A stretch of 64,000 nt of DNA from Malacoraja senta (lineage: Eukaryota): NCBI GenBank assembly GCA_038087875.1, contig JAXLNO010002060.1, positions 1 to 64,000 of the forward strand, written 5' to 3'. The notes under the pieces were generated by a model. That model was not told the DNA's origin. It made no database searches and saw only the letters and a program-made list of their open reading frames with translations. Shown here one piece after another: positions 2,102-63,690 of this stretch; the first letter of the stretch is position 1, and each line of letters starts with the position of its first letter. The position numbers and the translations under genes were made by a program.

Positions 2102-3097
2102 ATGAAAAGTACATCTCCAGGTCAGAGCCCACAGAGGAAAATCTCAAAACATCTGCTAAAGACTCTGGAACAGCAAGAAACTTCAGAACTGACCTCTGGA
2201 GAGGTCTCTGGAATGGCTACTCGATCTGCAAAAGAGAAAACCGAAATGGAGGACTTAAGAAACTCGGTAAGAGATATCAAAAATGATATGGAAGCTGGGA
2301 ACAGTAAATTGATAGCCGGTAATGATAAAATACTTGAGGGTATTGAGGCTCTCCAAAAAAGAATTGAAGGTGTGGAAAAAGGACTATCGATAAAAATTGA
2401 AAAGGTGGCAGAAGAGACCACAAAGATGTTTGAGGCTGTGCACGAAACTGTGGCTGCAAATGCATCTGCAGTGAATGATTTGGAAGCTGCTGTGGAAGTG
2501 ATGGCTGGAGAGATGCAGACTATGAAGTCAGAAATAGATAGTCTCAAGAACCAAGTCACAAAGGTTTCGAATAAATGTGTTGACCTAGAAGCTCGCTCAA
2601 GACGTCAAAATATAAGAATACGTGGTGTAAAAGAGGGAGCTGAGGGGGACAATGTTTGTGAGTTCGCTGCCAACCTAATTAAACACGTACTGAAGCTACC
2701 AGAAGTACCTGTAATTGAAGTAGCACATCGACTCCCCAGATTTAAATCAAGATCTCAAGGAGAACGTGCCTACCCACGACAGATCATAATTAAACTTCGG
2801 GATATCTCAACAATGGAAGCGCTGATGAAAAAAATCAACCACGGAGAGAAGATGATGTACAGAGGTGATACTATTAAACTCCTACGGGACTACCCTTATG
2901 AGATTGAGCAAAAGAGAAGAAAGTTCTCACAGACCAGAGAAGTTCTTTATGGTGTTAAGGGAGTTTTGTGTGGAGTGTTTTACCCGGCTAGAATGCGTAT
3001 CACCTTTGAGGGAGTGTCAAAAACATTCACTAATTCGGATGAATCTCTCAAATACGCTCAAGAAATCGCGACTAAGGCTGCATCAACTGGAGACTGA
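2102..3097 (+). CDS. L1-A ORF1p (coiled coil + RRM/CTD), 331 aa
   Basis: Heptad-rich N-half, then DLEARSRRQNIRIRGVKEG, HR, RQIIIKL, RDYP and YPARMRI motifs typical of L1 ORF1p. Confidence 0.95.
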   Translation: MKSTSPGQSPQRKISKHLLKTLEQQETSELTSGEVSGMATRSAKEKTEMEDLRNSVRDIKNDMEAGNSKLIAGNDKILEGIEALQKRIEGVEKGLSIKIEKVAEETTKMFEAVHETVAANASAVNDLEAAVEVMAGEMQTMKSEIDSLKNQVTKVSNKCVDLEARSRRQNIRIRGVKEGAEGDNVCEFAANLIKHVLKLPEVPVIEVAHRLPRFKSRSQGERAYPRQIIIKLRDISTMEALMKKINHGEKMMYRGDTIKLLRDYPYEIEQKRRKFSQTREVLYGVKGVLCGVFYPARMRITFEGVSKTFTNSDESLKYAQEIATKAASTGD

Positions 3098-4316
3098 AAA
3101 CCAAGACGACATGAACAAATGAACTTGCTTATTCTTCCAACAAGAATATCACAAGGAAAGTGAATTAACTGAACACTGATTTTTTATTTTTTATTTGACT
3201 TCAAGCAACAGATTCTTAGTGAGACGTGGCTAGACATTATTATCTTCGCTGGAACATTGTGCTATGTAATTCAAGGACACTACGTGCTCAAACGAGGAAA
3301 ACCTGATAACGGGACGAACTGCTGGGCTGAGAGTGAAAAACATCACATGGCTTATATTGTTTATAAAAAACTGAAAAAACTGAGAACTAATAATAATTAA
3401 CAATTAACAATACTAATATAGAAATAGCAATTGAAATAGATAAAAAATGTGCAGTCTGCTCTGTTTAGCAGATAACAGCAAGTGCTATGCAGCTCGAGAG
3501 TGGAGGGAGGGGGAGACCGGGTACCTGGCATAACTCCAGGAGCCAGACTCCCGTTAACCCTTCCAGCGAACAGCTCATTTTTAACAATATTAAAATCAAT
3601 TTAAAATAGTTAAGAGATAATATACACTCGAGGTTGATATGAAAAATATATACGGCTTATATAGTTTTACAAAATGCTGAGAATTAATCATAATTAATAA
3701 TTAACAATACTAATATAGAAATAATATTTGAAACTGATAAAACTGTGGTGCCTGCGTCATAACGCAGACAGCAGTTATCACCTATGTTCGCAGCTCGTGG
3801 AGAGGAGAAGAGATCAGGCACCTGGCACAATTCCAGGAACCTGACTCCGGTTAATCCACTCAGTAAACCGCTCACTTTAACAATACTAAATTCATTTTAA
3901 AATAGTTAAGAGATAAAGAGTGAGTAGGATATGGAATCGAATACATTTGACATATATATAAATTGTAACTGGGTGAAATAGAACTGAATTGGAAACGGTA
4001 ATGACCCCATAGATTTTGGGTAATAAATACAGCGGGGCTAACTTTATACCAACTACGCCGGAAGCGTTATGGATGTCGTACCCCACAGACGAGTGGGCCA
4101 CTCACTACGGTGTTGAAATTTTAGACACCGTAAATTTATTTGATTTATATATATATTTTTTTTTAATCACAATATGTCACATCTGTGTGTTTTTTCTTCA
4201 AGGACAATCGCGCAGGAGAACTACCAAGGAAGTCTATAATAGAAATACTCCCAAAATAACCAGAGTCCGGAGGTATGAACGCACCACAATAATTAAGGTC
4301 ATTAAAATTGGTAAAA

Positions 4317-7300
4317 ATGCATGACGACAATCAAAAGAAAATAGGAGGAATCACATTATGTAGTTGGAATATAAGGGGGATTAATGAACCTATTAAAAGG
4401 GGCAAGATACTAGCTCAGTTGAAATCATACAACACGGACATAGCGTTTCTACAGGAAACACATCTTAAACAGCAAGATCAGACAAGACTGAGGGCGAACT
4501 GGATAGGCCAAACATTTCACTCTTCATTTACCTCCAAATCTAGAGGTACTGCAATTATTATTCGTAAAGGAATTCCATTTAAATCAAAGAACACTATTTT
4601 AGATAAGGAAGGGAGATATCTTATAGTAGCAGGGGAGATCAATAATATGCCAATTACGCTGGTAAACATATATGCGCCCAACTTTGATAACCCTCAATTT
4701 TTTAATAAAATTCTGAATATAATTGCAGAATCTAATTATCAAAATGTTATAATCGGAGGAGATTTTAATTGTGTTTTAGATCCTTATTTAGATAAATCGA
4801 TGCAAAAACAAAAAGGTCAGACGAAATCTAAAACCAGTGAACTCTTACACACATATATGGAAAACACAAATATAACAGATGTATGGAGGATTGCAAACCC
4901 GACGGGAAGGGATTACTCGTTTTATTCAATGGTGCATAAAACATATTCACGGATAGACTATTTTCTAGTGGATACAAAATTAATTTCGCAATCTCTGAAT
5001 CCTAAATATCATATTAATGCGATCTCAGATCATTCTCCGTTAACTTTTGTTCTAAAACTAGAAGGAATGTCTATGAATAAACCGTTCTGGAGGTTTAACT
5101 CACAAATTTTAAAAGACCCTCAAGGGAGTATCTATCTAAAAAAACAGATGGATCTATTTTTTGAGTTAAATGATACACCAGAGATATCCCCCACGTTATT
5201 ATGGGAATCCTTCAAAGCATTTATAAGAGGAGTCATTATTTCATTTCAAGCTTATCAAAATAAAAAGAATAAGAATGAACAAAGACACTTAGAAGATCAA
5301 ATAAAACAGTTAGATATAGATAATGCTAAAGACCCAACTATGGATAAACATAATAAAATACTACTACTGAAATTTCAGTTAAATAAATTACTGTCAGAGA
5401 AAGTTATAACATTATTTCAAATCACAAAACAAGAACACTTCGAATTCGGGGACAAACCCCACAAACTTCTAGCACGACAACTTAAAAAACGGGAAAAAGA
5501 GAATGCAATATTAAAGATTAAATCAGATAGAGGGGAAGTATTAACACTACCCAAGGATATTAATAAAAGATTTGCTCAATTTTACCAGAATCTATACACA
5601 TCTAAAACGTCAATAGACAATAATAAAATCTCAGAATTTTTAGATAATTGTAATCTACCACAATTAGAACGCAGGGAACAAGAGGAACTGGGAGCACAAA
5701 TTACTTCTAAGGAGATAGAAGACACAATAAAAACACTAAAAAATGGAAAAACACCAGGACCAGACGGATTCAGTAATGAATTTTATAAATCTTTTTATGA
5801 TATAGTTACTCCACGATTACAAAAAATGTATACATATGCTTATAAAGAGCAAAACCTACCTGAAACACTAGCGGAATCAACGATCATATTAATACTTAAA
5901 AAAGATAAAAATATAGAAGAACCAGGATCATATAGAGCTATTGCTTTGTTAAATACGGATCAGAAAATAATAGCAAAAACATTAGCCAATAGATTAAGCA
6001 AGTATGTTAGTAGACTAATACATGAGGATCAAACAGGATTTATACCTAAGAGACACTCATTTAATAATTTGAGACGTTTGCTTAACATAATGCATTCACA
6101 TAAATCTTATGACCAAGAGTTAGCTATCATCTCACTGGACGCAGAAAAAGCGTTTGATCAAGTAGAATGGGACTATATGATCAAAGTATTGCAAAAATTC
6201 CAATTGGGAGAAAACTTTATTGCATGGATAAAACTACTATATAACAAACCTACGGCTAGAATACTAACTAATAATATATTATCTTCAAAATTCGAATTAT
6301 CTAGGGGCAACAGACAAGGATGTTCACTATCACCGCTGTTATTTGCTTTGGTAATTGAACCCCTTGCTGAAAAAATAAGAACACACTCGAATATTCACGG
6401 TTATAACACAAAATATTCAAACAACAAACTATCCCTATATGCTGATGATGTACTACTGTACATCACAAAACCACAAATTAGTATACCAAATATATTAAAC
6501 TTAATTGAGGACTTTGGATCCTTTTCAGGATATAGAATAAATTGGAACAAAAGTGAAATTATGTCGATTAAACCAAAAGACTCAACACATCTCAGGAAAT
6601 TCCCTTTTAAAATAGCTATGGAAAAATTCAAATATTTAGGAATTGAGATTACTAGAAATTACCATGATATGTTTAAAGCTAATTATAATCCCCTACTTAA
6701 GAAATTAAATAATCTGATTAAATTTTGGAAAACACTTCCGATGTCCTTAATAGGTAGGATAAATGCTATAAAAATGATTTTCTTACCACAAATCCTTTAC
6801 CTATTTCAATCAATACCTATATATCTCCCAAAAAAGTTTTTCAAAAAACTGGACTCAGACATTACAAATTTTATATGGGATTACAAATCCCACAGAATAC
6901 AAAGAACACACCTTAACAAACGAAAAGAGTTGGGGGGTCTAGCGCTCCCTAACTTTATGTATTATAACTGGGCAGTAAATATTAAAAATATGATTCACCT
7001 GCTGGACAATTCTGCCCAGCAGGTGGACTGGATTATAATGGAAAAAGGGGATTGCTCCCCGAATAATATAGGAGCGATTATTCTCTCTCCAATAAATTTG
7101 AATAATAAAAATTATAATAAAAATCCAATTATATATAGCACTATTAGAACATGGAAGCAAATAAAACAGAATCTAAAATTAAGAAACCTATCTCTCTTAA
7201 TACCAATAGTCAATAACCCATCGTTTAAACCTTCAATCATAGATAAAGCATTTATACAATGGGAAAGAATGGGAATTAAAACGCTCGAAGATCTGTATGA

Positions 7301-8108
7301 ATTAGAAAAATTACTATCATTCCAACAACTACAACTGAAATATAATTTGAAAAATAATCAATATTTTAAATATATACAAATCTGTGACTATTTGAAAACA
7401 CACACAAAAGATTATTATAATATGCCTTCCGACTTACTAGATGAAGCAATGAAGACAAAGGCGGAATCAGTTAATTTAATATCATACTTATATAATATCA
7501 TCTTAAATATAGAAATACCCACAACAGATGGAATTAGAAGAGATTGGGAACAAGATCTAGGTATAAAAATTTCAAAAGAGAGTTGGGATAATCATTTATT
7601 ACAGGTGCATAAATGCTCGATCAACGTACGACATACGCTTATCCAATTTAAAACATTACATAGATTATATTATTCAAAAACCAAACTAAATAAAATCTTT
7701 CCTAACGTCTCACCAATCTGTGATAAATGTATATGTCAAGAAGCTACCATAGCACATTCTTTTGTTTTTTGTACAAAAATCCAAAAATTCTGGTTTGAAA
7801 TATTTGATATTTTTTCAAAATTAATCAAAATAAAACTGGTACCAAAACCAGAATGGATTATTTTTGGAATATCGGAAGGTATTCCTGAATTAAACGTGTA
7901 TCAGAAGAATTTACTCAATTATGGGCTAATAATGGGAAAAAAGCTTATACTTAAATTCTGGAAAAATGCGCCCACACCAACAATAAAAATGTGGACATCA
8001 AATATGTTGGAAACATTACATCTGGAAGAGATGAGATTCCTCCTAGTAGGCAAAGTAGATCAATTTCAAAAGACGTGGTCTACGTTTTTGGACCTATTAC
8101 AAGCATGA
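4317..8108 (+). CDS. L1-A ORF2p (APE endonuclease + reverse transcriptase + C-terminal Cys-rich region), 1263 aa
   Basis: SWNIRG, LQETH, GGDFN, SRIDY, SDH (EN); PGPDG, SLDAEKAFD, QGCSLSP, YADD (RT); CDKC...HSFVFC (C-terminal). No stops. Confidence 0.97.
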   Translation: MHDDNQKKIGGITLCSWNIRGINEPIKRGKILAQLKSYNTDIAFLQETHLKQQDQTRLRANWIGQTFHSSFTSKSRGTAIIIRKGIPFKSKNTILDKEGRYLIVAGEINNMPITLVNIYAPNFDNPQFFNKILNIIAESNYQNVIIGGDFNCVLDPYLDKSMQKQKGQTKSKTSELLHTYMENTNITDVWRIANPTGRDYSFYSMVHKTYSRIDYFLVDTKLISQSLNPKYHINAISDHSPLTFVLKLEGMSMNKPFWRFNSQILKDPQGSIYLKKQMDLFFELNDTPEISPTLLWESFKAFIRGVIISFQAYQNKKNKNEQRHLEDQIKQLDIDNAKDPTMDKHNKILLLKFQLNKLLSEKVITLFQITKQEHFEFGDKPHKLLARQLKKREKENAILKIKSDRGEVLTLPKDINKRFAQFYQNLYTSKTSIDNNKISEFLDNCNLPQLERREQEELGAQITSKEIEDTIKTLKNGKTPGPDGFSNEFYKSFYDIVTPRLQKMYTYAYKEQNLPETLAESTIILILKKDKNIEEPGSYRAIALLNTDQKIIAKTLANRLSKYVSRLIHEDQTGFIPKRHSFNNLRRLLNIMHSHKSYDQELAIISLDAEKAFDQVEWDYMIKVLQKFQLGENFIAWIKLLYNKPTARILTNNILSSKFELSRGNRQGCSLSPLLFALVIEPLAEKIRTHSNIHGYNTKYSNNKLSLYADDVLLYITKPQISIPNILNLIEDFGSFSGYRINWNKSEIMSIKPKDSTHLRKFPFKIAMEKFKYLGIEITRNYHDMFKANYNPLLKKLNNLIKFWKTLPMSLIGRINAIKMIFLPQILYLFQSIPIYLPKKFFKKLDSDITNFIWDYKSHRIQRTHLNKRKELGGLALPNFMYYNWAVNIKNMIHLLDNSAQQVDWIIMEKGDCSPNNIGAIILSPINLNNKNYNKNPIIYSTIRTWKQIKQNLKLRNLSLLIPIVNNPSFKPSIIDKAFIQWERMGIKTLEDLYELEKLLSFQQLQLKYNLKNNQYFKYIQICDYLKTHTKDYYNMPSDLLDEAMKTKAESVNLISYLYNIILNIEIPTTDGIRRDWEQDLGIKISKESWDNHLLQVHKCSINVRHTLIQFKTLHRLYYSKTKLNKIFPNVSPICDKCICQEATIAHSFVFCTKIQKFWFEIFDIFSKLIKIKLVPKPEWIIFGISEGIPELNVYQKNLLNYGLIMGKKLILKFWKNAPTPTIKMWTSNMLETLHLEEMRFLLVGKVDQFQKTWSTFLDLLQA

Positions 8109-41232: not shown

Positions 41233-43593
41233 GGTTTAAGGTGAGGAGGAAGATTTAATAGGAACCTGAGAGGCAACCTTTTCTACTAAGAGGTTACTGG
41301 GTGTATGGAATGAGCTGCCAGCGAAGACAGAATAACAACATTGAAAAGACACTTGGACAGGTACATGGATAGAACATGTTGAGAGGAATGTGGGCCAAAT
41401 GCTGGCAAATGTGACTAACCTAAATGTAGCATCTTGTTCAGCTTGGAGCATTAGGCTGAAGTACCTACTTCCATGCTATATGGCTATATGACTCTTTGTT
41501 AGATGAACATAAACATGGCAAATGGAGTTTAATAATGGAAAATATGTGCTCACACACTTTGGTAAGAGCAATTCAAAGGAAGCTATTATCTAAATGGAGT
41601 GAGATTGCAAATGAGTGGAGTACAAGAGATTCAAGTGCTTAAAGTGCAAAACAAAAAGCCAGCAGGTAGATGCAGCACACAACTCAGAAGGTGAGTAGCA
41701 TTCAAAGGTAGGTTACTATTGTAATTATGGTACATGATGTTGCTAAGGACATATCAGGAGCACTGTGCACAGCTTGGTCCTCAAATTTAAGAAAGGATAT
41801 ATTAATATTGCATATCAGCTAGAAGAGATTTCTGGAATAAGCAAGTGTTGCCTAACCATGAATGGCTGAAATCACTGGTTCTGTGTCCCTTGGGGATGAC
41901 AAGAAACAGAGTTAACCTTATGAATGTATTAAAGAGGCATGATGTGGTGGTGAATTGATGGATAATGCGTGGATATATTCTAAAAGAACAGGGAATTGTG
42001 TCTTATGTGGAATAAGCACAGTAAAGGAGTTGAGGCATCAGTCATATCAGCTGTTATCAACATAAATTGCTAGATAGCTCTAATTTGTACAAATGCAGGG
42101 CAGTTTATTGAGAATTTCTGTCATGTTTGATAAACTTAATTGAACTCTTTCCATTTATTTCAGTTCCTGCATTTTAATCACATCCATGAAATCTTCTACT
42201 CAGCGATTGGTTAGCAGTGCACGTTCTGCTTTGGTTGAATATTTTGATAATCTGAGGAGGGAAATTAAATATTAGACAACAAAGAAATGGCATAGCAGAG
42301 AACAGAACTCAGAAAGATGCAACTACTTTATTCACTTTAACTGTTGATTCAACCCACATAACATCTTCCTTCCAGATATAAAGGCACAGTGCCAGACACC
42401 TGGGTTTGATCCTGACCACGGGTGATGTCTGTACGGAATTTGTACCTTCTCCCTGTGACTGCATAGGTTTTCTCCAGGTGCTCCAGTTTCCTCCCACATT
42501 CCAAAGACAGATGTGCAGGTTTGTAGGTTAATTGACTTGTGTCCCTAGCTTATGTGGGTGATCGTTGGTTGGTGCGGACTCAGTGGGGCCGAAGTGTCTG
42601 TTTCAATGCTCTCTCTCTAAACTAAACAAAAAACTCAATACTCCTTCAAATAGTTCCGTTCACACAAGTTCTATGTTATCTAACTTTCGCTTCCACACTA
42701 GGGTCAAATTACAGAGACCAATTAACCCATAAAACCTGGCATCTTTAGTATGTGTGTGAAAACTGGAGGACAGTGGAAACCCATGCGGTCATAGGGAATA
42801 CATGCAAACTTCACACAGCCGACAACCGAGGTTAGGATTGAACTGATGTGTATGACGCACTGAGGCAGCAGCTCTATCAGCAGCGCCACTCTGCCTCAGG
42901 TTGCGTCATGTTCAGCACAAACGTTGTTGGACAAAGGACCTGTTCCTCTATTACAGGGGCATTCCCATTCACCGTAAAATTCAGCGAACTCAGCACCATT
43001 GGGTCACTGGAAATATTCCCTGCCTGACCATCAGATCCCTCCAGATCAGTCAGACAGACACCAGTTAGGCAGCATCTGCCTGCAAATGATTCATGTCCCT
43101 CAAACCCCTCCATCTCCATGCACCACGAAGGTGCACCCCAGACGCCACCATCCCTGGCAGTGCTTTCCAGGCACACACCACATAGTATGTAATAAAAACT
43201 TGCCCTTTTAAAAACTGCAGCTTCTACCCTGCACTGAATATAATGCAATAAGTTAAATGCCATAGTAGGCATTTAGTTAATTGGGATAATTTTAGTCAAT
43301 TGGGAGGTGTGATTGCAAATCTTGTACAATATCATAAACCAAGTAAAATGTGACAAAGTCAAAATGGCCAGGCACAAAGAACAGAATAATCATGAACATC
43401 AATAACATGTCAATAACTAGACTCTCCTTGTGTAAGGCAGCATGCTGTAAGGTTGCAAACTCGTTTGCTCCCTTAACTTTTAACTTCCACTGACCACTCT
43501 TTCAATGTTACTGGTGACTATTTGACTTCAAGACACCGTCTAACTGTTCATAAAGTGTTGATAACACTTTTACACGCCTTAATCGTGAAAAGC

Positions 43594-44430
43594 ATGGAGA
43601 CAAGAAGGAAAGGAGGATCCCCAAAGAAGGAACTGGGGAAAGCCACAACCACAGCTGTAGCTTCTGATTCCAGCATCATAGAAGCAATATCGAAAATGAA
43701 CGATGAATTGAAAAATGAGCTGAAAAATGAAATGAAAACAAGATTTGGCAGTTTGGAAGAAATGGTGAAAGGAGTTTCGACCAAATTGAAGGAAGTCCAA
43801 GGAAAACTGTCTTTGTTACAAGATGAACTTCGTGAACAAAAGGATCAAATTGATATCTTGCGCACCCTGGGACAGGAGAGAGATTTGAAGATTGAAAAAT
43901 TGGAACGGAGAATGAATGAAAACACTCGAGCACTTCAGCAATACAGGTCTAAAAATATGGACTTAGAAAACAGAAGCCGTCGTTTGAATTTACGAATTGT
44001 TGGTTTGCCGGAAGGCCAAGAAGGAGATAACGTTATAAAATATGCTTCTAAAATGATAAAGGAAACATTCAACATTGAGCACAATGAAAACCTTCCGTTC
44101 CTGGAGAAGGCACACAGGATTGGGAAGAGATCCGGTAATAAACCGAGACACTTGATCATTCGGTTTCATTTTTTTCAAATGAAGAAGAATATTCTCCAGG
44201 CAGCAAAAAAGTTTGGTGTGGTTGAATACGAAGGATGTAAGTTTCGGTTTGTCCCTGATTATAGTTACGAGCTTTTGGAAATAAGAAAGACTTTTTATAA
44301 TGTAATGTCTGATTTGTATAAGAAAAAACTGCGCCCAGCTCTATTATCACCAGCTAGATTGCGTATTCGGCTTTTCAATGGTAACTTTCGATTTTTTAAC
44401 AGTCCTCAAGACGCCTCCAGCTGCGTCTGA
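43594..44430 (+). CDS. L1-C ORF1p
   Basis: METRRKG start, coiled coil, DLENRSRRLNLRIVGLPEG, AHR, FVPDYS, PARLRI. Confidence 0.85.
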   Translation: METRRKGGSPKKELGKATTTAVASDSSIIEAISKMNDELKNELKNEMKTRFGSLEEMVKGVSTKLKEVQGKLSLLQDELREQKDQIDILRTLGQERDLKIEKLERRMNENTRALQQYRSKNMDLENRSRRLNLRIVGLPEGQEGDNVIKYASKMIKETFNIEHNENLPFLEKAHRIGKRSGNKPRHLIIRFHFFQMKKNILQAAKKFGVVEYEGCKFRFVPDYSYELLEIRKTFYNVMSDLYKKKLRPALLSPARLRIRLFNGNFRFFNSPQDASSCV

Positions 44431-45051
44431 AGAGCTACGACGAGGAAGGGGAGTAATTGATAGCTGATTAAGTTATAATTGGAGATTTACTGTTCCTAAT
44501 TTGACAACATTTCGTTTCGTAATGATTAAGAATTTAACTGGACGAGTTGTTTTTCTTTTATATATATTCTTTTAAGAATTTCTTTGTTAATTCGTGTTCC
44601 CCTGTCGTTAGACAAACTAAGAGAACGCAGTTCTTGTTTTTTATATCTTGACCTTGGATAATAATAAGCAGCATTCCATGCCAGTCTGTATTTTTTTTTC
44701 TTCTCTCTCAAAGAGATAATAACGAATGTGTTATGACGTAGTGGTTAAATATTATTCATTTTATGCTGAGCGCTGTTACTGGGAGAGATGGGATTGGGGA
44801 GAGGATTAGGTAGTTTGCTGACTGTCTTTTGGTCAGTTTGGGGTTCTACAGGGGTGGGAGGGGGGAGGGGGGAGGGGGGAGGGGTCTTTTGTTCCCTATT
44901 TTGTGATCTCCATTTGTGCAAATTCTGAACTACAAAATTGGCTGAAATGTCGTCACCTGGCTCCGCCCTAGATTTTTCTTCTTCCAGTATTATGAACTTT
45001 TAGGCTTCAAGAAATTAACCCATTACATCCCACATGATTTTTACAAGCAAT

Positions 45052-48000
45052 ATGGATAAAGTTACTAACTTCCTTTCATGGAATGTGAATGGCTTGAACC
45101 ATCCCATTAAGAGGATATTTTTTTAAAAAGTTCTTCACAGACTAAATGCTCAGATTATCTTTGTTCAGGAAACTCATGTAAGGCAAGATGACAAGTCACG
45201 ATTTTTCAAGTTTTGGAGAGGACAGCAGTTTCATTCAAATTCACAGGCTAAGGTGAAAGGTTGTCTCTATTTTTATTGACCCCTCAATTCTGTTTGTTCA
45301 CCATGAAACAATTTCTGATCCATATGGCAGATTCTTGGTGATTACCGGTGTCCTTTATAGGCAAAAAGTCGCTATGGTGAATGTCTATGCACCAAATATT
45401 GATCACCCTGAGTTTTTTAAACAGTTAATTGCATCCTTTCCTAATTTAAATGAACACTTTTTAATAATGGGTGGAGACTTCAATTGCTGTTTGAATCCCT
45501 CGATTGATACGTCTACATGTGATCATGTGCTTCCAAATAAATCAGCTAATTTTATTAATTCTTTTTTACTTGACTCGGGAATGTTAGAAATTTGGAGATT
45601 CTTACATGCAAATGACAAAGAATTTTCATTTTTCTCTCATGTATATCATAGTTATTCTAGGATCGACTATTTTATACTAGATTCTCGGCTAGTTCCATTC
45701 GTCATTGCATGTGAGTATGATACAATTGCTATTTCTGATCATGCACCAGTGAAACTATTGATCAAACTACCTGATTCCAAGTTTAGTGCTAAACAATGGC
45801 GATTTAATGCTACTTTGCTTCAAGACTTAAACTTTATTAAGTTTATGAAAGATCAGATTGCTTTTTACTTCTTGACAAACTCTAATGAAGAGATATCCAA
45901 TGATATAGTTTGGGATGCTTTTAAGGCATATATTCGTGGACAAATTATTTCATACTCCGCGGGATTAAAAAAACAAACTCAAAAAGAAATACGCACATTG
46001 GCTGACGAGATTAAAGAAATAGATAAAAAATATTCAAAAGCTCCTAGTTTAGAGCTCTATAAGAATAGAGTTGAACTTCAATTGAGATATGATTTGTTAT
46101 TAGTATCACCGATTGAGAACCAGTTACTTAAAACCAAAAGTAAATTTTATATAAATGGCGTAAAATCTGGTAAATTACTTGCTAATCAATTGAAAGCAGT
46201 GTCGGCCAAGCGTCAGATTACTAAAGTGAGTAAACGGGATGGTACAGTAACCGTAGACCATGACGAAATTAATAAATCCTTTCAGGAATTTTATACCTCC
46301 CTATACCAATCAGATTTTCCTACTGATTCCAATATATTGCATGAGTTTTTAAAGAAACTGAACTTACCAAATTTACCATATAATGAGTCTCTGTTGTTTC
46401 GATGAACCCATCACGGAAGACGAAATACAGAAAGCAATATTTTCAATGAATTTTGGTAAAGCTCCCGGATTAGATGGGTTTACAGTAGAATTCTTAAAGT
46501 ATTTCTCAAATTTATTGTCTCCATGGCTATGCAAGGTATTTAAAGAAGCCTTTTTAAGGAATAGATTACCACAATCTTTTTATGAAGCTTCTATTTCTTT
46601 AATTTAAAAAAGATAAAGACCCTACTGAAGTGACATCATATAGACCTATATCAATGTTAAATGTAGATTTTAAAATTCTTTCCAAAATATTAGCTATGAG
46701 ATTGGAAAAGATTTTACCGCAAATTATCTCTGAAGATCAGACAGGTTTTATTAAAAATCGTTACTCATTCTTTAATGTTAGGAGACTAATAAATATTGTA
46801 TATACAGCGTCTAATAAAACCCCAGAATGTGTCATCTCACTTGATGCCGAGAAGGCTATTGATAGAGTAGAATGGAATACTTATTCAATATACTTGAAAA
46901 AGTTAAGATTGGTCCAAAATTTATCTCTTGGATCAAACTGATATATCTTATACCTCAGGCTTCTGTATTTACTAATAATCAGAGATCCCCTTTTTTCAGG
47001 CTCTTTCAAGGTACTAGACAGGGCTGTCCCTTAAGTCCTTTACTATTTGATATTGCTTTGGAAACTTTAGCCACTGCTATTAGGGAATACCCTAATATTT
47101 TTGGTATTGTCCGCGGGAATAAGACACATAAGCTATCTCTTTATGCAGATGATCTGTTATTATTTATTTCTAACCCTGAGAAATCTATTCCGGCAATAGT
47201 AGCATTACTTAATCAATTCAGTAGTTTTTCTGGTTATACAATACAATACAATACAATACAATTTATTTGTCATTTGGACCCCGTTGAGGTCCAAACGAAA
47301 TGTCGTTTCTGCAGCCATACATTACAAAACGAAGAAGACCCGAGACACAACACAATTTACACATACAGCCATCACAGCGCTGTGATGGAAGGCAAAAAAA
47401 ACGTATCTCTCCACTGCACTCACCCCCCCGATGTCAGAGTCAAAGTCAAAGCCCCTGGCGGGCGATGGTGATTGTCCCGTGGCCATTAAAGCCACGCCGG
47501 GTAATGCAAGGTCGCGCACCGGGTCTTGGTGTTAGAGCCCCGGCGTGCGCTAGCAAAGTCCCGCGGCCATTCCAAGCCGCGCGGGACGGTGATGTAAAGC
47601 CCCGCTCCAGGTGCTCTTCAACCCCGCAACTCGGGCGGGAGAAGTCGCCGCTGTGGAAGCCCCGAAAAGCGGTCTCCCACCAGGGACCCGCGGGCTTCCG
47701 GTGTTGCCGTCCGCCAGACCCGCGGCCGTAGCCCCCGAATCTCCGGGGGTCGGGTCGCAGCAGCGCTCCACCACAGCTCCACCCGCTCCGGACTCGGCCA
47801 GCCCCGTGACGGTGAGTAGTCCGCAGCTCCGCAACTGGAGCCCCAGGTCGTTCCTGCTGGAGGCCGCTCCACGTTGCCCAGCCCCAACGACAACGGAGAC
47901 CCGACAAAGAAAAGGTCGGGTCTCCCGTGCAGGGGAAAGATTTTAAAGTTCCCCCCCCCCACCCCCACACACATACCCCGACCAAAAAAATAATAAAAAC

Positions 48001-49657
48001 TACATAGAAACGAGACAAAAATAATAAAAAGACAGACGGACTGCAGAGGCCGCTGCTGACGAGAGTCGCGCCTAAATCTAAACTAAACTAATTATAAACT
48101 AAATCTTAGTAAGAGTGAGCTTTCCCATTAAATAATTTTGTTTCGAGTTATGGACAGTTTCCATTTAGATTGACTGCCGAACCATTTTTACTTATTTAGG
48201 TATTAAGATCACCAAGAAACACAAGGATTTATTTAAAGCTAATTTTATTCCTTTAATTGACCATATTAAACATCAGTTCACTAAATGGTCACCAATGTCC
48301 TTATCCTTAATTGGCTGAATCAATGCTATTAAAATGTTCATTTTACCTAAATGTCTGTATTTATTTCAGACGATACCAATTTTTATTGCCAAATCTTTCT
48401 TTGATATTATAGACTAAAATTTCTTCATATATATGGCAGAATAAAAATCCCAGACTAGGTAAAAAATACCTACAGAAATCAAAAAAAGTTGGTGGTTTGG
48501 CATTGCCGAACCTTAGACTCTACTATTGGGCAGTCAATGTTCGTTATTTAACATTTTGGACAAAAGATTTAGAAGATACCCAATGCCCTGGATGGATAAA
48601 CCTAGAACGTGATTCCTTACAAGGGCTATAATTGGCTTCTATTCTAGGGACCTCGTTACCTTTTACAATTACGAGATTGAATAAATATATGACGAACCCA
48701 ATAATAAGACATACGTTCCGAATACGGTTTCAATTTTGTAAGTTTTTTGGACTATCTGATTTTATCCAAATTTCTCTTCCAACCATCTAGTACTGATCAA
48801 GTTTTTTTGTAATGGAAGAGGAAGGGATTAGTAGCTTTTCGTGATTTGTTTTTGGAGTGTTGTTTTATGTCTTTCGAACAACTCTCCAATAAATATAACT
48901 TACCTAATTCACACTTTTTTAGATATTTACAAATTAGACAAAAGGAACTACCCCTTTTTCCGCTACCACATCAACCCGAAATTTTGGAATTTTGTTTACA
49001 GTTGAACCCTTATCAGAAAGGATTAATAACGACTATTCATGAGTTGATTTTAAAATTACAAATAGATACATTTGATAAAATTAAGAATGACTGGGAAAGA
49101 GAACTCCAAATTTCTTTCTCTATAGAGAAATGGGAGAGGATCCTTCAATTAGTTAATACCTCTTCAATGTGTGCAGACACGCTTTGATACAATTCAAGGT
49201 GGTCCACAGAGCTCATATGTCAAAAGATAAGTTAGCTCGTTTTTATGGTCATATAAATTCTACCTGTGACAGATGTAATTCTGAAGTGGCATCACTGACC
49301 CATATGTTTTGGTCCTGCCCTCTTTTGGAAAAATATTGGAAAGAAAGTTTTGATACTATTTCAGTAGTCTTAGGTATAGATTTACAACCTCATCCTATTA
49401 CTGCAATTTTGGGTTACCAATGTTAGATTCTATTCATTTGTCCCACTCCGCCCATCGGTTGATTGCTTTTACCACATTAATTGCCAGAAGATTTATTTTA
49501 TTTAAATCGAAAGATTCCAACCCTCCGACCACACTCCAGTGGTATTCTGAAACGATATCATGTTTAAATTTAGAAAAAATCAGGTGACATTGTTGAACCC
49601 TTGGTTAAATTTGATAAGACTTGGGGAAAATTTATTGAACACTTTCATACAACATAA
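45052..49657 (+). pseudogene. L1-C ORF2, several frameshifts and one insertion
   Basis: MDKVTNFLSWNVNG, QETH, GGDFN, SRIDY, SLDAEKA, QGCPLSP, YADD, CDRC...HMFWSC spread over several frames. Confidence 0.9.
47238..48091 (-). mobile_element. About 850-bp GC/CpG-rich non-coding retroposon with a (TTGTA)n tail, nested in L1-C ORF2
   Basis: Splits ...FSGY|KLNLSKSELF (short TTATA overlap); minus-strand 3' end TTGGACC-loop-GGTCCAA, AATAAA, (TTGTA)n. Confidence 0.7.
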
Positions 49658-50396
49658 ATTGTTCCCTCTTTAACCGTTATAAAACATATTTTACCTTCAT
49701 AGGGTGGAACAGACTTGACGACAAACAGACTTAAATTGTTGAATTTCTCAGTTCANNNNNNNNNNNNNNNNNNNNNNNNNNNNNNNNNNNNNNNNNNNNN
49801 NNNNNNNNNNNNNNNNNNNNNNNNNNNNNNNNNNNNNNNNNNNNNNNNNNNNNNNNNNNNNNNNNNNNNNNNNNNNNNNNNNNNNNNNNNNNTTACATTT
49901 ATGTTTCCTTTTAAAGATTGAACTATATTCATTGTGTATTTTGACACTGGTCTCATATTAGGTTATACCTGTTATTAATGTGTTTAATCATGATCCCTAT
50001 GTATCAATACCATTGTTATGTTTATCATTATTCTATTTGCTCTGTTTTTTTTATGTTTTATTTTTATTTTTGTTTTTGTGTTTTGGAAAAAAAACAATAA
50101 AAAGATTTTAAAAGAAAGGTACTGAATAAAAAAGTTGGGATGTTCTGCTACAGTTGTACAATATGTTGGTGAGGCCACATTTGGAGTATTGTGTTAAGTT
50201 TTGGTCACTCCACTATCGGAAGGATGTCATTAACAGGGCCTGTGATTCAGGGAGAGGATGAGAATGCTTGGACTTTAATCCTTGGCACGCAAGAGGCTGA
50301 GGGGTGATCTTATAGAGGTTTATAAAATCAAGGAGCATAGATAGATTGAATGCACAGAATCTTTTAACCAGCCTTGTGTAATCAAGAACCAGAGGA

Positions 50397-50899
50397 TGGA
50401 TTAATAACAGCAAAAAAATTAATACTGAAATTTTGGAAAAATGCTCCTACGCCAACAATAAAAATGTGGACTTCTAATATGTCAGAATTGTTACATCCAG
50501 AAGATATGAGATTCCTCCTAGCAGGTAAACAAGACCAATTCCAAAAGATTTGGTCTCCATATATTGACTTATTACAAACATAAGGTGCAACAAAATGATG
50601 ATAATAAATGGTTTTAAGTCCTGGCGAGGGGTGAGTAAAGATAAGAAGTAGGTGCATCCCTTTCATATTGTCCTATCTTATTTTATTTTTTCTCTTTTTT
50701 TTCCTCTCTTCTTTAACTACTTCATGTGGTTTAGGTTCACATGTGTGTTCCTGGACCACTTTTTCATTCACTCACTGACTGTCTTTGCTAGCTCTTTCTA
50801 TCCTTTCTTTCTATTAAAGTTGAAAAACAAAAGTGGTACAAGAACTGTATAAATTTACGTTATTGCAGATTACTGTAATGTAAAATACTTCTAATAAAT

Positions 50900-62060: not shown

Positions 62061-63438
62061 TTATTTTAAAAAAATATATTGTTATTAGAAGCATGTGCAT
62101 ATCATAATACAAACATTTCTTATATATCAATCCTACTTTGCTAATAGGTGGGAGTCCAGGTATCAAAATAATAGTGGTCCTCCTTTATCAATTGTATATT
62201 AAATCTGCTTCTATTTAGGTTTTTTTTTATAGATAGAAAGTGAGAAATTAAAAAAAAAGGCATGAAAAAGAAGAATGGAATAATTTACCAATAATACAAC
62301 TTTGGAGATAGGTCCGTAGGTTATAAAGCATAACTATTCATCTAATCCTGAGCTTGGATTTCAGTCAGATTCCTATGCTGAACCAATTTACCCTTTCAAA
62401 AAATCAATAAATGGAGACCATATTCTATTAAATAATTCATGTTTTTCAATTAAGACAAGTCTAGTTCTTTCCAAATGTAAGGTCTCCGATATTTCCATAA
62501 TCCACATTTTAATTGTGGGGGTTATAGGACCTTTCCAAAATTTTAATATTAATTTTTTCCCAATTATTATACTATAATCAAGAAAGTTTCTTTGGTTTAT
62601 TGTAAGTCTTAGGCTTTGTTCTGATATTCCTAATATTATTATGAGTCGGGATCCAATTGGGTATTGACTAATTCAGAAATTATTCTGAAAATGTCCGTCC
62701 AGAAATTTTTGATTTTTATACAATTTACAAAGGTATGAGTTAAGTTAGCCTCTAAATGCTGGCATTTATCACAAATAGGAGAGATATGTGGGAAGATTCT
62801 ATTTAATTTTGTTTTAGAATAATGTCATCTATGTAATACTTTAAATTGTATTAAGGCATGTCTGGCATTTAATGAGCATTGATGTATATATTGTAGACTT
62901 TCGTCCCAAATATCTTTCGTTATGGGTTGGCCTAATTCATTTTCCCATGTGTGTCTATATAAATCCGTCGGCGGGACCTCACTATCTAAGAGGGTATTAT
63001 AAATATGAGATATTAATTTTTCTGTATTAGGATGTTTATTCAAACATTCATCAAGGATTTCTGGTTCCCTAGTTCTGTAATCTTGTGTATTTGATTTAAT
63101 GTAATCTCTAATTTGTAAATATCTAAAAAAGTTATTTGAGTGTGGTCCGTAAATCTGTTGTAACCCCTGAAATTACAGAAAAGTGCCTTTCCTATAAAGA
63201 TGTCCCATCTTTTTAATTCCATAATTTTTCCATTGTGTAAAGCCTTTATCCAACATGGAAGGTTTGAATAAAGGGTTGTTTATAATGGGGAGACAGTGAC
63301 AATTATCCAATTTTAAAGTCTTTTTTAATTGTTTCCAAATTCGTATACCACTATATATTATAGGATTTTCACTATAGGTGTTTTAATGCAATTTTGTGGG
63401 AGCAAACATAATCGAACCAATTTCAAAAGGCAAACAGT
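62061..63438 (-). mobile_element. 5'-truncated, decayed L1 inserted in a CR1 3' fragment
   Basis: ORF2 C-terminal remnants (CSLNARHALIQFKVLHR); A-rich tail; 13-bp TSD CTTTCACTATTTT at 62048-62060 and 63439-63451. Confidence 0.88.
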
Positions 63439-63690
63439 CTTTCACTATTTTGTATGATTCAATGAGGTCCCCCCTTATTCTTCTAAACCCCAGCAAGTAC
63501 AGGCCCACTGCCATCAAATGGTCATCATATGTTAACCCATTCAATCCTGGGATCATTCTTGTACACCTCCTCTGGACCCTCTCCAGAGCCAGCACATCCT
63601 TCCTCAGATATGGTGCCCAAAATTGCTCACAATGCTCCAAATGTGGCTTGACCGGCGCCTTATAGAACCTCAGCATTACATCCCTGTTTG
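63439..63690 (-). mobile_element. CR1 ORF2 C-terminal fragment (continues at ~61750-62060)
   Basis: FYKAPVKPHLEHCEQFWAPYLRKDVLALERVQRRCTRMIPG. Confidence 0.85.

What the first reader, a model, noticed from the sequence alone, without database searches (positions are those of the whole stretch)
4073..4324. Candidate third ORF in the L1 spacer whose stop overlaps the ORF2 start (AUG-NN-stop)
Seen: L1-A has an ATG-started 83-aa ORF (4073-4324) and L1-B an 85-aa ORF (13008-13265). Both end in AAAATGCATGA, so the TGA begins 5 nt after the A of the ORF2 AUG. They stay open in the same register across an AT-rich, indel-containing spacer, share PTxxWxTxY, TP, YxRTT and terminal NA, and carry a central hydrophobic stretch. 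The more distant L1-C has the same geometry with different bases (ATGGATAA at 45052-45059, frame open from ~44946 but without an ATG). Known: AUG-NN-UGA overlap is the geometry of calicivirus termination-reinitiation, and overlapping stop-start coupling is used by some non-LTR elements; here ORF1 stops 0.6-1.2 kb away and cannot couple directly. Inference: a dedicated small ORF relays ribosomes to ORF2 and may encode a small membrane peptide, i.e. a tricistronic L1. Caveats: the hydrophobic stretch coincides with a T-rich tract, the homologous ATG is not frame-conserved between A and B, and A and B share ancestry.
Basis: partly seen in the sequence, partly recalled or inferred. Interest (0 to 1): 0.78.

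Follow-up and report, generated by a model that had tools for sequence, protein, structure and literature searches.

The report
Upstream reading frame overlapping L1 ORF2
Two jumping genes (L1 elements) in this skate-like genome carry an extra 83-85-codon reading frame that ends just after the start of their enzyme gene ORF2; most related L1 lineages keep such a frame open although its peptide is not conserved, so it probably controls ribosome access to ORF2 and does not encode a third protein.

Summary
L1-A has an ATG-started 83-codon frame (4073-4324) and L1-B an 85-codon frame (13008-13265). Both stop at a TGA that begins 5 nt after the A of the ORF2 AUG.

It is more than chance.
- Each is the longest sense ORF in its spacer (shuffle p <= 0.002).
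- Randomly placing the 83 A/B substitutions keeps the frame open in only 0.4-3% of trials.
- Among 38 independent L1 lineages fetched from public contigs, 32 have an ATG-started, out-of-frame ORF running over the ORF2 AUG. About 15 were expected (P about 1e-8). Mean length was 49 codons against 11-17 in three null models.
- A 39th lineage, from a named wrasse, lacks it.

The peptide is not conserved.
- pN/pS is 1.03 for A/B, against 0.14 in ORF2.
- There is no cross-lineage homology and no Pfam match.
- The hydrophobic stretch is a translated T-tract.

The exact AUG-NN-stop spacing is not conserved either. Offsets run from +1 to +118 nt, median 14.

Best reading: a translated uORF whose peptide sequence does not matter and which delivers or gates ribosomes at ORF2. 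Termination-reinitiation is favoured, and an ATF4-like inhibitory uORF is the main rival.

First readers noted the same feature on other DNA of this genome; none of those notes was followed up.

The parts
2102..3097 (+). L1-A ORF1 (331 aa, intact)
3098..4316 (+). L1-A inter-ORF spacer: 1219 nt, 36% GC, 15 ATGs, with an internal tandem duplication (3334-3620 similar to 3640-3916, 74% identity)
4013..4324 (+). L1-A stop-to-stop open stretch (103 codons) in frame +2 relative to ORF2
4073..4324 (+). L1-A upstream ORF (83 codons, ATG to TGA). A stronger-context ATG at 4069 in another frame lies 4 nt upstream
4082..4131 (+). Two predicted RNA hairpins (stems 4082-4086/4093-4097 and about 4107-4113/4126-4131). 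They underlie the PTxxWxTxY conservation. The homologous hairpins in B lie at about 13032-13079, with one G-C to A-U compensatory pair
4317..4324 (+). Stop/start overlap ATGCATGA: ORF2 Met-His-Asp codons, with the uORF TGA 5 nt after the A of the AUG
4317..8108 (+). L1-A ORF2 (1263 aa, intact; endonuclease plus reverse transcriptase by homology)
11378..12448 (+). L1-B ORF1 (356 aa; only 42% identical to A ORF1)
13008..13265 (+). L1-B upstream ORF (85 codons), same stop/start octamer. UGGGA at about 13210, 48 nt before the AUG
13258..17052 (+). L1-B ORF2: 80% aa identity to A. The N-terminus is broken by three 1-nt insertions with an in-frame stop at 13324; the frame is open again from 13369
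44946..45059 (+). L1-C (decayed copy): 37-codon open stretch without an ATG, ending in TAA 5 nt after the ATG at 45052. An alternative in-frame ORF2 ATG lies at 45034 (ATGA)

Best explanation
The 83/85-codon frame is a translated upstream ORF whose peptide sequence does not matter. It is one example of a feature shared by most L1 lineages that have a long ORF1-ORF2 spacer.

Proposed mechanism: ribosomes that start at an AUG 0.1-0.35 kb upstream of ORF2 translate across the AUG-rich, T- and G-tract-containing end of the spacer. They terminate 1-30 nt past the ORF2 AUG. A fraction of the post-termination 40S subunits then reinitiate at that nearby AUG. This is termination-coupled reinitiation, which makes the L1 RNA functionally tricistronic.

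Shown: the ORF exists, it is statistically kept open across lineages, its peptide is unconstrained, and upstream AUGs are not depleted.
Inferred: that it is translated, that termination feeds ORF2 initiation, and how ribosomes reach the uORF AUG.
For: Openness is selected.
- 32 of 38 independent lineages have an ATG-started out-of-frame ORF spanning the ORF2 AUG. Expected numbers were 15.4 (dinucleotide shuffle) and 14.8 (30-nt block shuffle), P = 2e-8 and 1e-8. Mean length was 49 codons against 10.6.
- The result holds against other positions in the same natural spacers: 44.6 against 16.6 codons, Wilcoxon 5e-5, and it is the longest spacer ORF in 15 of 34.
- It is robust to coarser clustering: 29/34, 22/26 and 10/13.
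- 12 of 12 slightly decayed copies also have it.
- In A/B the frame survived 83 substitutions in 242 aligned nt (P = 0.004-0.03) and indels that sum to a multiple of three.

The peptide is irrelevant, as expected for a regulatory uORF.
- pN/pS is 1.03 against 0.14 in ORF2.

Scanning is implausible.
- 108 intervening ATGs were found against 98 expected, and the ORF2 AUG context is only moderate.

Stops lie somewhat closer to the AUG than alternative-frame stops elsewhere in ORF2: median 14 against 23 nt, KS p = 0.02.

The last 100 nt before the AUG are predicted to be unstructured in A and B.

Two otherwise intact ORF2s without an N-terminal AUG (L009, L025) have a 38- and a 56-codon uORF ending exactly there.

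Precedent in the literature:
- Removing all spacer AUGs from a 445-nt megabat L1 spacer lowered retrotransposition 3.3-fold. This was read as support for the view that an ORF must terminate close upstream of ORF2 (PMC4072516).
- Overlaps of up to about 29 nt are tolerated in pneumovirus M2 reinitiation (PMC5972666).
Against: - There is no translation evidence of any kind.
- In A, a better-context ATG at 4069 in another frame lies 4 nt before the uORF ATG. A simple first-AUG chain of short uORFs from the ORF1 stop reaches the ORF2 AUG without using the 83-codon ORF.
- ORFs longer than about 30 codons normally do not permit reinitiation without a tethering signal. The only known such core (UGGGA) is absent from A and present in just 13 of 38 lineages.
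- The proximity of the stop is only weakly significant (p = 0.02), and 6 of 32 offsets exceed 34 nt.
- 6 of 38 lineages, plus a named wrasse L1 (L096) that was chosen beforehand, lack the ORF altogether.
- The hosts of most comparison contigs are unknown metagenome or read-archive assemblies.
Confidence: 0.42

Rival explanations
1. ATF4-type gate. The long out-of-frame uORF over the ORF2 AUG is inhibitory. Ribosomes reinitiating after the short spacer uORFs normally enter it and overshoot ORF2. Only when ternary complex is scarce (stress, or particular germline or embryonic states) do they bypass its AUG and start at ORF2. This would keep ORF2p scarce and conditional.
For: - The architecture is the same as the ATF4 pattern: several short uORFs followed by one long uORF that overlaps the main start out of frame (for A/B, for the clade).
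- Peptide-independence and selection for openness are equally predicted by this model.
- The stop need only lie beyond the AUG, which fits the wide spread of offsets from +1 to +118.
- In A the first-AUG chain of short uORFs can reach ORF2, while the 83-codon ORF would divert ribosomes past it.
Against: - On average three other AUGs lie between the uORF AUG and the ORF2 AUG (108 in 32 uORFs). These would intercept ribosomes that bypass the uORF start.
- Stops lie closer to the AUG than the null predicts (p = 0.02), which a pure gate does not need.
- In the only experiment on a long L1 spacer, deleting the spacer AUGs lowered retrotransposition (PMC4072516). That is the opposite of what relief from an inhibitory uORF would give.
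Confidence: 0.25
2. By-product. The selected thing is an RNA or DNA element at the 3' end of the spacer: T/GT-rich tracts, G-runs and hairpins, for example an IRES or a protein-binding platform. The open frame would be a side effect of its A-poor composition and of shared ancestry.
For: - G-runs and T/GT-rich words are strongly enriched in the 200 nt before ORF2. GGGGT occurs in 21/38 lineages against 1/32 controls, and TTGTT in 30/38 against 8/32.
- All stop codons contain A.
- In A, 4165-4236 is open in all three frames.
- The A/B blocks that look like conserved peptide are two predicted hairpin stems with one compensatory pair.
- IRES predictors place an IRES next to ORF2 in 32 of 36 long spacers (PMC5381506).
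Against: - Shuffling within 30-nt blocks, which keeps local composition, still gives only 10.6 codons and 14.8 lineages expected.
- In 28 of 32 lineages both other frames of the same interval are closed, at 6.2% stops per codon.
- uORF composition (25% A) hardly differs from the spacer further upstream (27% A).
- An entry site gives no reason for a frame to run exactly up to and over the AUG.
Confidence: 0.17
3. A third L1 protein. The ORF encodes a small hydrophobic or basic peptide (membrane- or RNA-active) that functions in retrotransposition.
For: - Most lineage peptides contain a very hydrophobic stretch of about 20 residues (maximum 19-residue Kyte-Doolittle hydropathy above 1.6), and several have basic tails.
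- Lengths of 50-120 codons are unusual for regulatory uORFs.
Against: - pN/pS is 1.03 for A/B. Close pairs show 7 nonsynonymous and 0 synonymous changes, and their uORF nucleotide divergence is 4-5 times that of ORF2.
- Mismatches are spread evenly over codon positions, and the central third is read in different phases in A and B.
- No significant similarity exists between lineage peptides except one related pair.
- Pfam gives only a far sub-threshold match, E = 0.3.
- The hydrophobic stretch is the translated T-tract and the basic tail is the translated A-rich leader.
Confidence: 0.06
4. Programmed frameshift. The upstream frame is an N-terminal extension joined to ORF2 by ribosomal frameshifting in the overlap.
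For: - The upstream frame and ORF2 overlap.
- Earlier notes on this genome propose -1 frameshifting for its CR1 elements.
Against: - Lineages use both alternative frames, with overlaps as short as 1 nt (ATGA), which leaves no room for a shift site.
- The would-be extension is unconstrained.
- ORF2 always has its own AUG at the conserved N-terminus.
Confidence: 0.03

Closest known systems
Unconventional termination/reinitiation of mammalian L1 ORF2 (Alisch et al. 2006, as summarised in PMC4072516 and PMC5972666) and the megabat long-spacer L1 (Yang et al. 2014, PMC4072516)
   Same: - The same element class and the same problem: ORF2 sits downstream of ORF1 on one RNA.
- ORF2 initiation is thought to need an ORF terminating close upstream.
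- In the 445-nt megabat spacer, removing the spacer AUGs lowered retrotransposition 3.3-fold.
   Different: - In human L1 the terminating ORF is ORF1 itself, 63 nt upstream.
- Here ORF1 stops 0.3-1.3 kb away, and a separate 50-120-codon ORF, conserved as an open frame, ends on the ORF2 AUG.
- No paper I found describes such a conserved overlapping spacer ORF.
TURBS-dependent termination-reinitiation of caliciviruses (VP1/VP2) and influenza B (M1/BM2)
   Same: - A long upstream ORF whose stop overlaps or abuts the restart AUG (AUGA, UAAUG and AUG-NN-stop types).
- Low-efficiency restart that gives a scarce downstream protein.
- G-rich words, including UGGGA in some lineages, lie 40-160 nt upstream.
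   Different: - The UGGGA core is absent from L1-A and found in only 13 of 38 lineages.
- There is no fixed distance to the restart site.
- The stop lies after the AUG by up to tens of nucleotides.
- The upstream ORF has no conserved protein product.
Pneumovirus M2-1/M2-2 coupled translation
   Same: - The restart AUG lies upstream of the stop of the preceding ORF, with overlaps up to about 29-32 nt.
- It depends on a large upstream region (about 200 nt) without motif 1 (PMC5972666).
   Different: - It is a viral mRNA and the upstream ORF encodes a conserved protein.
- No such structure has been tested here.
SART1 (silkworm non-LTR element) UAAUG coupling
   Same: A non-LTR retrotransposon that uses stop/start overlap to translate ORF2.
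   Different: - There the overlapping ORF is ORF1 and the stimulatory structure lies downstream.
- Here a separate spacer ORF does the overlapping.
ATF4/ATF5-type uORF control
   Same: Short 5' uORFs are followed by a long uORF (59 codons in ATF4) that overlaps the main start out of frame. The peptide sequence is irrelevant.
   Different: - In ATF4 the overlapping uORF is inhibitory, and no AUGs intervene between its start and the main AUG.
- Here about three intervene.
Predicted IRES in long L1 spacers (Boissinot and Sookdeo 2016, PMC5381506)
   Same: [quoted passage not shown]
- The same T-rich repeats and G-rich stretches were noted there.
   Different: - That work proposed internal entry from predicted structure and did not report an ORF.
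- An entry site does not explain a frame kept open up to the AUG.

Membership tests
L1-clade LINE with long ORF1-ORF2 spacer | ORF1 followed by an ORF2 with an apurinic-type endonuclease and a reverse transcriptase | tested here: met
   ORF2 of A matches 730 proteins (best 53% identity) that carry PF03372 and PF00078. ORF1 and ORF2 are mapped.
L1-clade LINE with long ORF1-ORF2 spacer | [quoted passage not shown] | tested here: met
   Spacers are 1219 nt (A) and 809 nt (B) at 32-36% GC. Relatives have 322-1219 nt. The published description is in PMC5381506.
TURBS-type termination-reinitiation (calicivirus / influenza B) | Stop of the upstream ORF within a few nt of the restart AUG | tested here: met
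   The offset is +5 nt in A and B. It is at most 14 nt in 20 of 32 lineages, but ranges up to +118.
TURBS-type termination-reinitiation (calicivirus / influenza B) | [quoted passage not shown] | tested here: not met
   The motif is absent from the 250 nt before the AUG in A and present at -48 in B. It occurs in 13 of 38 lineages at scattered positions, against 4 of 32 in a control window.
TURBS-type termination-reinitiation (calicivirus / influenza B) | Complementary motifs 2/2* that present motif 1, and pairing with helix 26 of 18S rRNA | not tested
   No rRNA sequence of this organism was available from a tool. The last 100 nt before the AUG are predicted to be unstructured.
TURBS-type termination-reinitiation (calicivirus / influenza B) | ORF2 synthesis depends on translation and nearby termination of the upstream ORF | not testable with these tools
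   This needs reporters or ribosome profiling.
ATF4-type overlapping inhibitory uORF | Short uORF(s) followed by a long uORF that overlaps the main AUG out of frame | tested here: met
   A has 8 short uORFs and B has 9 before the 83/85-codon ORF.
ATF4-type overlapping inhibitory uORF | An AUG-free path from the long uORF's start to the main AUG, so that bypassing ribosomes reach it | tested here: not met
   There are 108 intervening ATGs in 32 uORFs, and only 4 uORFs have none.
Conserved small protein (third L1 gene product) | Purifying selection on the amino-acid sequence | tested here: not met
   pN/pS is 1.03 against 0.14 for ORF2. Close pairs show 7 nonsynonymous and 0 synonymous changes. 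There is no excess of third-position changes.
Conserved small protein (third L1 gene product) | Recognisable homologues in related elements or known families | tested here: not met
   All-against-all BLASTP found only one related pair. Pfam gave nothing above threshold.
Programmed ribosomal frameshift fusion | A fixed frame relation and an overlap long enough for a slippery site | tested here: not met
   Both alternative frames are used, and overlaps are as short as 1 nt.

The most novel reading that the evidence does not exclude
Long-spacer L1 elements of fishes, and by inference the ancestral vertebrate L1, are functionally tricistronic. A dedicated 'carrier' ORF that makes no conserved protein, helped by G-tract and U-tract RNA signals, ferries ribosomes across the spacer and hands them to ORF2 by virus-like termination-reinitiation. 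This would be the general answer to how ORF2p is made when ORF1 stops a kilobase away.
Probability: 0.2. Interest if true: 0.8.

Novelty: new variant of a known kind. Interest (0 to 1): 0.62.

Why it matters
How the second protein of a LINE is translated from a bicistronic RNA has been open since the 1990s. For elements with long spacers, which are the ancestral vertebrate state according to PMC5381506, the only proposals are in-silico IRES predictions.

A frame that is kept open in most lineages, ends on the ORF2 AUG and has an unconstrained peptide is a concrete, mutable handle. It turns the question into three simple reporter experiments and one ribosome-profiling re-analysis.

It also warns annotators not to call these frames a third L1 protein or a viroporin-like gene.

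Tried and rejected
- **Chance.** Rejected by three null models and by the A/B substitution simulation.
- **Local A-poor composition.** The 30-nt block shuffle gives the same null as the dinucleotide shuffle.
- **Conserved peptide.** Rejected by pN/pS, codon-position counts, phase-shifted alignment, all-against-all BLASTP and Pfam.
- **Known RNA family in the A spacer.** Rfam at E <= 1 gave nothing.
- **Calicivirus UGGGA as a general signal.** It is enriched only as part of a general G-run enrichment and is absent from A.
- **AUG depletion, as expected for leaky scanning or shunting.** Not seen.
- **Dose-response between intact and slightly decayed copies.** Uninformative: 12 of 12 decayed copies still have the ORF, and they carry only 1-5 stops in the first 250 ORF2 codons.
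- **The uORF as the tail of ORF1.** Excluded for the 24 lineages where ORF1 was found, with spacers of 322-1219 nt. This was not checked for L033 and L077 (130-151 codons).
- **Viral contig collection.** No relatives found.
- **Same-family copies.** The closest ORF2 in the protein database is only 53% identical, so the small peptide was not searched there.
- **Named-species anchor.** The one teleost locus fetched (wrasse L096) has no overlapping uORF. It is counted as a negative.
- **Alisch et al. 2006.** The paper could not be read; its content is cited second-hand.
Full report
**What is in the window**

The window is vertebrate DNA. Other follow-ups of this scan call the genome skate or cartilaginous-fish-like; I did not test that. 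It carries three L1 elements on the + strand.
- L1-A has an intact ORF1 (2102-3097), a 1219-nt spacer and an intact ORF2 of 1263 aa (ATG at 4317, stop at 8108).
- L1-B has ORF1 at 11378-12448, an 809-nt spacer and an ORF2 starting at 13258. The N-terminus of this ORF2 is broken by three single-base insertions with an in-frame stop at 13324. The remaining 1227 codons are open.
- A and B are 80% identical in ORF2 protein and 79.7% in ORF2 DNA, but only 42% in ORF1. They are therefore distinct families that share the ORF2 module and the last 300 nt or so of the spacer.
- L1-C (ORF1 43522-44430, ORF2 from 45034 or 45052) is decayed.

**Check of the observation**

- The small ORF lies in frame +2 relative to ORF2.
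- Its TGA starts 5 nt after the A of the ORF2 AUG, within ATGCATGA. That octamer is also the Met-His-Asp start of ORF2.
- In A, a better-context ATG in another frame sits 4 nt upstream, at 4069.
- L1-C has a 37-codon open stretch without an ATG that ends 5 nt after the ATG at 45052.

**Is it chance in A and B?**

The evidence says no.
- Over the same intervals the other two frames hold 5 and 10-11 stops.
- The small ORF is the longest sense ORF of each spacer.
- Shuffles reach its length in at most 0.2% of trials.
- A and B differ at 83 of 242 aligned positions inside the ORF, plus indels of 2, 8 and 1 nt that sum to a multiple of three.
- When those 83 changes are placed at random, the frame stays open in 3.0% (A to B) and 0.36% (B to A) of 20,000 simulations.

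**Is it a protein?**

The evidence says no.
- Peptide identity is 32% against 65% nucleotide identity.
- Mismatches are spread evenly over codon positions (0.28, 0.40, 0.26).
- The central 110 nt are read in different phases in A and B.
- pN/pS is 1.03, against 0.14 for the first 200 codons of ORF2 in the same pair.
- The blocks that look like conserved peptide (PTxxWxTxY) coincide with two predicted RNA hairpin stems, one of which shows a G-C to A-U compensatory change.
- The hydrophobic core is the translated T-tract.
- Pfam and Rfam give nothing.

**Relatives**

No close copy of the A or B families is in the databases; the best ORF2 hit is 53% identical. I therefore fetched DNA around ORF2 homologues.
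- Fourteen loci came through exact-protein look-ups.
- Eighty loci came from a metagenome scan with an alignment of ORF2 N-termini.
- I kept loci with an uninterrupted ORF2 N-terminus, an AUG at the conserved position and at least 250 nt upstream.
- Single-linkage clustering at 75% nucleotide identity then left 38 lineages, with A/B counted once.

Results for those 38 lineages:
- In 32, an ATG-started ORF in one of the two other frames begins upstream of the ORF2 AUG and stops after it.
- Dinucleotide shuffles of the upstream 400 nt predict 15.4 lineages, and shuffles within 30-nt blocks predict 14.8. Poisson-binomial P values are 2e-8 and 1e-8.
- Mean length is 49 codons against 10.6 in the shuffles, and about half of the lineages are individually significant.
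- Measured against other positions in the same natural spacers, the overlapping ORF averages 44.6 against 16.6 codons (Wilcoxon 5e-5). It is the longest spacer ORF in 15 of 34 lineages.
- The result survives coarser grouping at 70, 60 and 50% ORF2 identity: 29/34, 22/26 and 10/13, with P from 3e-8 to 5e-3.
- Twelve further copies with 1-5 stops in the ORF2 N-terminus all have the ORF.

Limits of this comparison:
- One wrasse L1, picked in advance as a named-species anchor, has no such ORF. The feature is frequent but not universal.
- Most comparison contigs come from metagenomes or read-archive assemblies whose hosts I could not name.

**Properties across lineages**

- Peptides share no significant similarity, apart from one related pair.
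- Two close pairs show 7 nonsynonymous and 0 synonymous differences in the uORF. In the same pairs ORF2 shows 3 nonsynonymous and 10 synonymous differences.
- Two in-frame indels (15 nt and 9 nt) were seen within clusters.
- Both alternative frames are used, and stop offsets run from +1 (ATGA) to +118 nt. The median is 14 nt, against 23 nt for alternative-frame stops elsewhere in the same ORF2s (KS p = 0.02).
In A, B and L004 it follows from the His codon CAT being followed by a GA- or AA-initial codon.
- The 200 nt before ORF2 are enriched in G-runs and in T- or GT-rich words. This matches the T-rich repeats and G-rich stretches already described for long L1 spacers (PMC5381506).
- The calicivirus core UGGGA occurs in 13 of 38 lineages (control 4 of 32), in B at -48, and not in A.
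- ATGs are not depleted between the uORF start and the ORF2 AUG: 108 observed against 98 expected, about one per 50 nt.
- The last 100 nt before the AUG are predicted to be unstructured in A and B.
- Two otherwise intact ORF2s without an N-terminal AUG have a 38- and a 56-codon uORF ending exactly where the ORF2 frame opens. This is anecdotal.

**Interpretation**

Only translation can select for a frame that is kept open, ends on the ORF2 AUG and has a free-running peptide. This is the signature of a regulatory uORF that does not depend on its peptide sequence.

I favour a positive relay by termination-coupled reinitiation (0.42), for these reasons:
- Scanning through an AUG-rich spacer is implausible.
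- The stops lie near the AUG.
- In the one experiment on a long L1 spacer (megabat, tested in human cells), removing the spacer AUGs lowered retrotransposition 3.3-fold. The authors tied this to the earlier proposal that an ORF must terminate close upstream of ORF2 (PMC4072516).
- Overlaps of up to about 29 nt still allow such restarts in pneumovirus M2 (PMC5972666).

The other readings, in order of weight:
- **ATF4-like inhibitory gate (0.25).** It predicts the same sequence signature. It fits the wide spread of offsets and the fact that in A a chain of short uORFs can reach ORF2 on its own.
- **By-product of an RNA element (0.17).** This is weakened by the block-shuffle control and by the closed state of the other frames.
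- **Functional peptide (0.06) and frameshift fusion (0.03).** Both are unlikely.

**Literature and novelty**

- Full-text searches and the vertebrate L1 survey (PMC5381506) turned up no description of a conserved spacer ORF overlapping ORF2. That survey proposes an IRES next to ORF2.
- The idea that ORF2 needs a nearby upstream termination is known. I therefore rate this a new variant of a known kind.
- First readers of this scan noted the same feature on other DNA of this genome (s1-140449, s1-141294, s1-424152). None of those notes had been followed up.

Noticed in passing
window 3334-3916: There is a tandem duplication inside the L1-A spacer (3334-3620 against 3640-3916, 74% identity).
   Followed up: partly
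window 4082-4131 and 13032-13079: Two adjacent predicted hairpins are conserved between A and B at the 5' end of the small ORF (z = -1.8 and -2.5). The stems are invariant and the loops differ. One pair changes from G-C to A-U. This explains the apparent peptide motif.
   Followed up: partly
window 2102-3097 vs 11378-12448: ORF1 of A and B are only 42% identical, while their ORF2s are 80% identical. This suggests exchange of the ORF1 module, or much faster ORF1 evolution, between co-resident L1 families.
   Followed up: no
window 13296-13345: L1-B ORF2 carries three separate 1-nt insertions within 50 nt that together restore the frame, with a stop in between. The remaining 1227 codons are open. 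The cluster could be a sequencing or assembly artefact at short homopolymers.
   Followed up: no
window 26234-27406: A 390-codon ORF has weak reverse-transcriptase similarity (25% to L1-A ORF2 residues 539-807). It is probably another retroelement.
   Followed up: no
window 48187-50580 and 62391-63439 (-): There are further L1 ORF2 3' fragments. One is 79% identical to A at its last 61 codons. One on the minus strand is about 50% identical.
   Followed up: no
L009 2129-2144; L025 242-412: These ORF2s have an otherwise intact N-terminus but no AUG. In each, an upstream ORF (38 and 56 codons) ends where the ORF2 frame opens. This would fit AUG-independent restart, or it may simply be a dead copy.
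   Followed up: partly
38 lineages, -200..-1 before ORF2 AUG (e.g. L001 1620-1660, window 44850-44890): Clusters of G-runs (GGGAGG, TGGGG) next to T- or GT-rich tracts are a clade-wide feature of the spacer end. GGGGT occurs in 21/38 lineages against 1/32 controls. They could form a G-quadruplex or a tethering element. L1-A itself lacks them.
   Followed up: partly
L096 (wrasse, OY660871.1): This intact teleost L1 has a 1288-nt spacer and no overlapping upstream ORF. Both alternative frames are closed within 6 codons of the AUG.
   Followed up: yes
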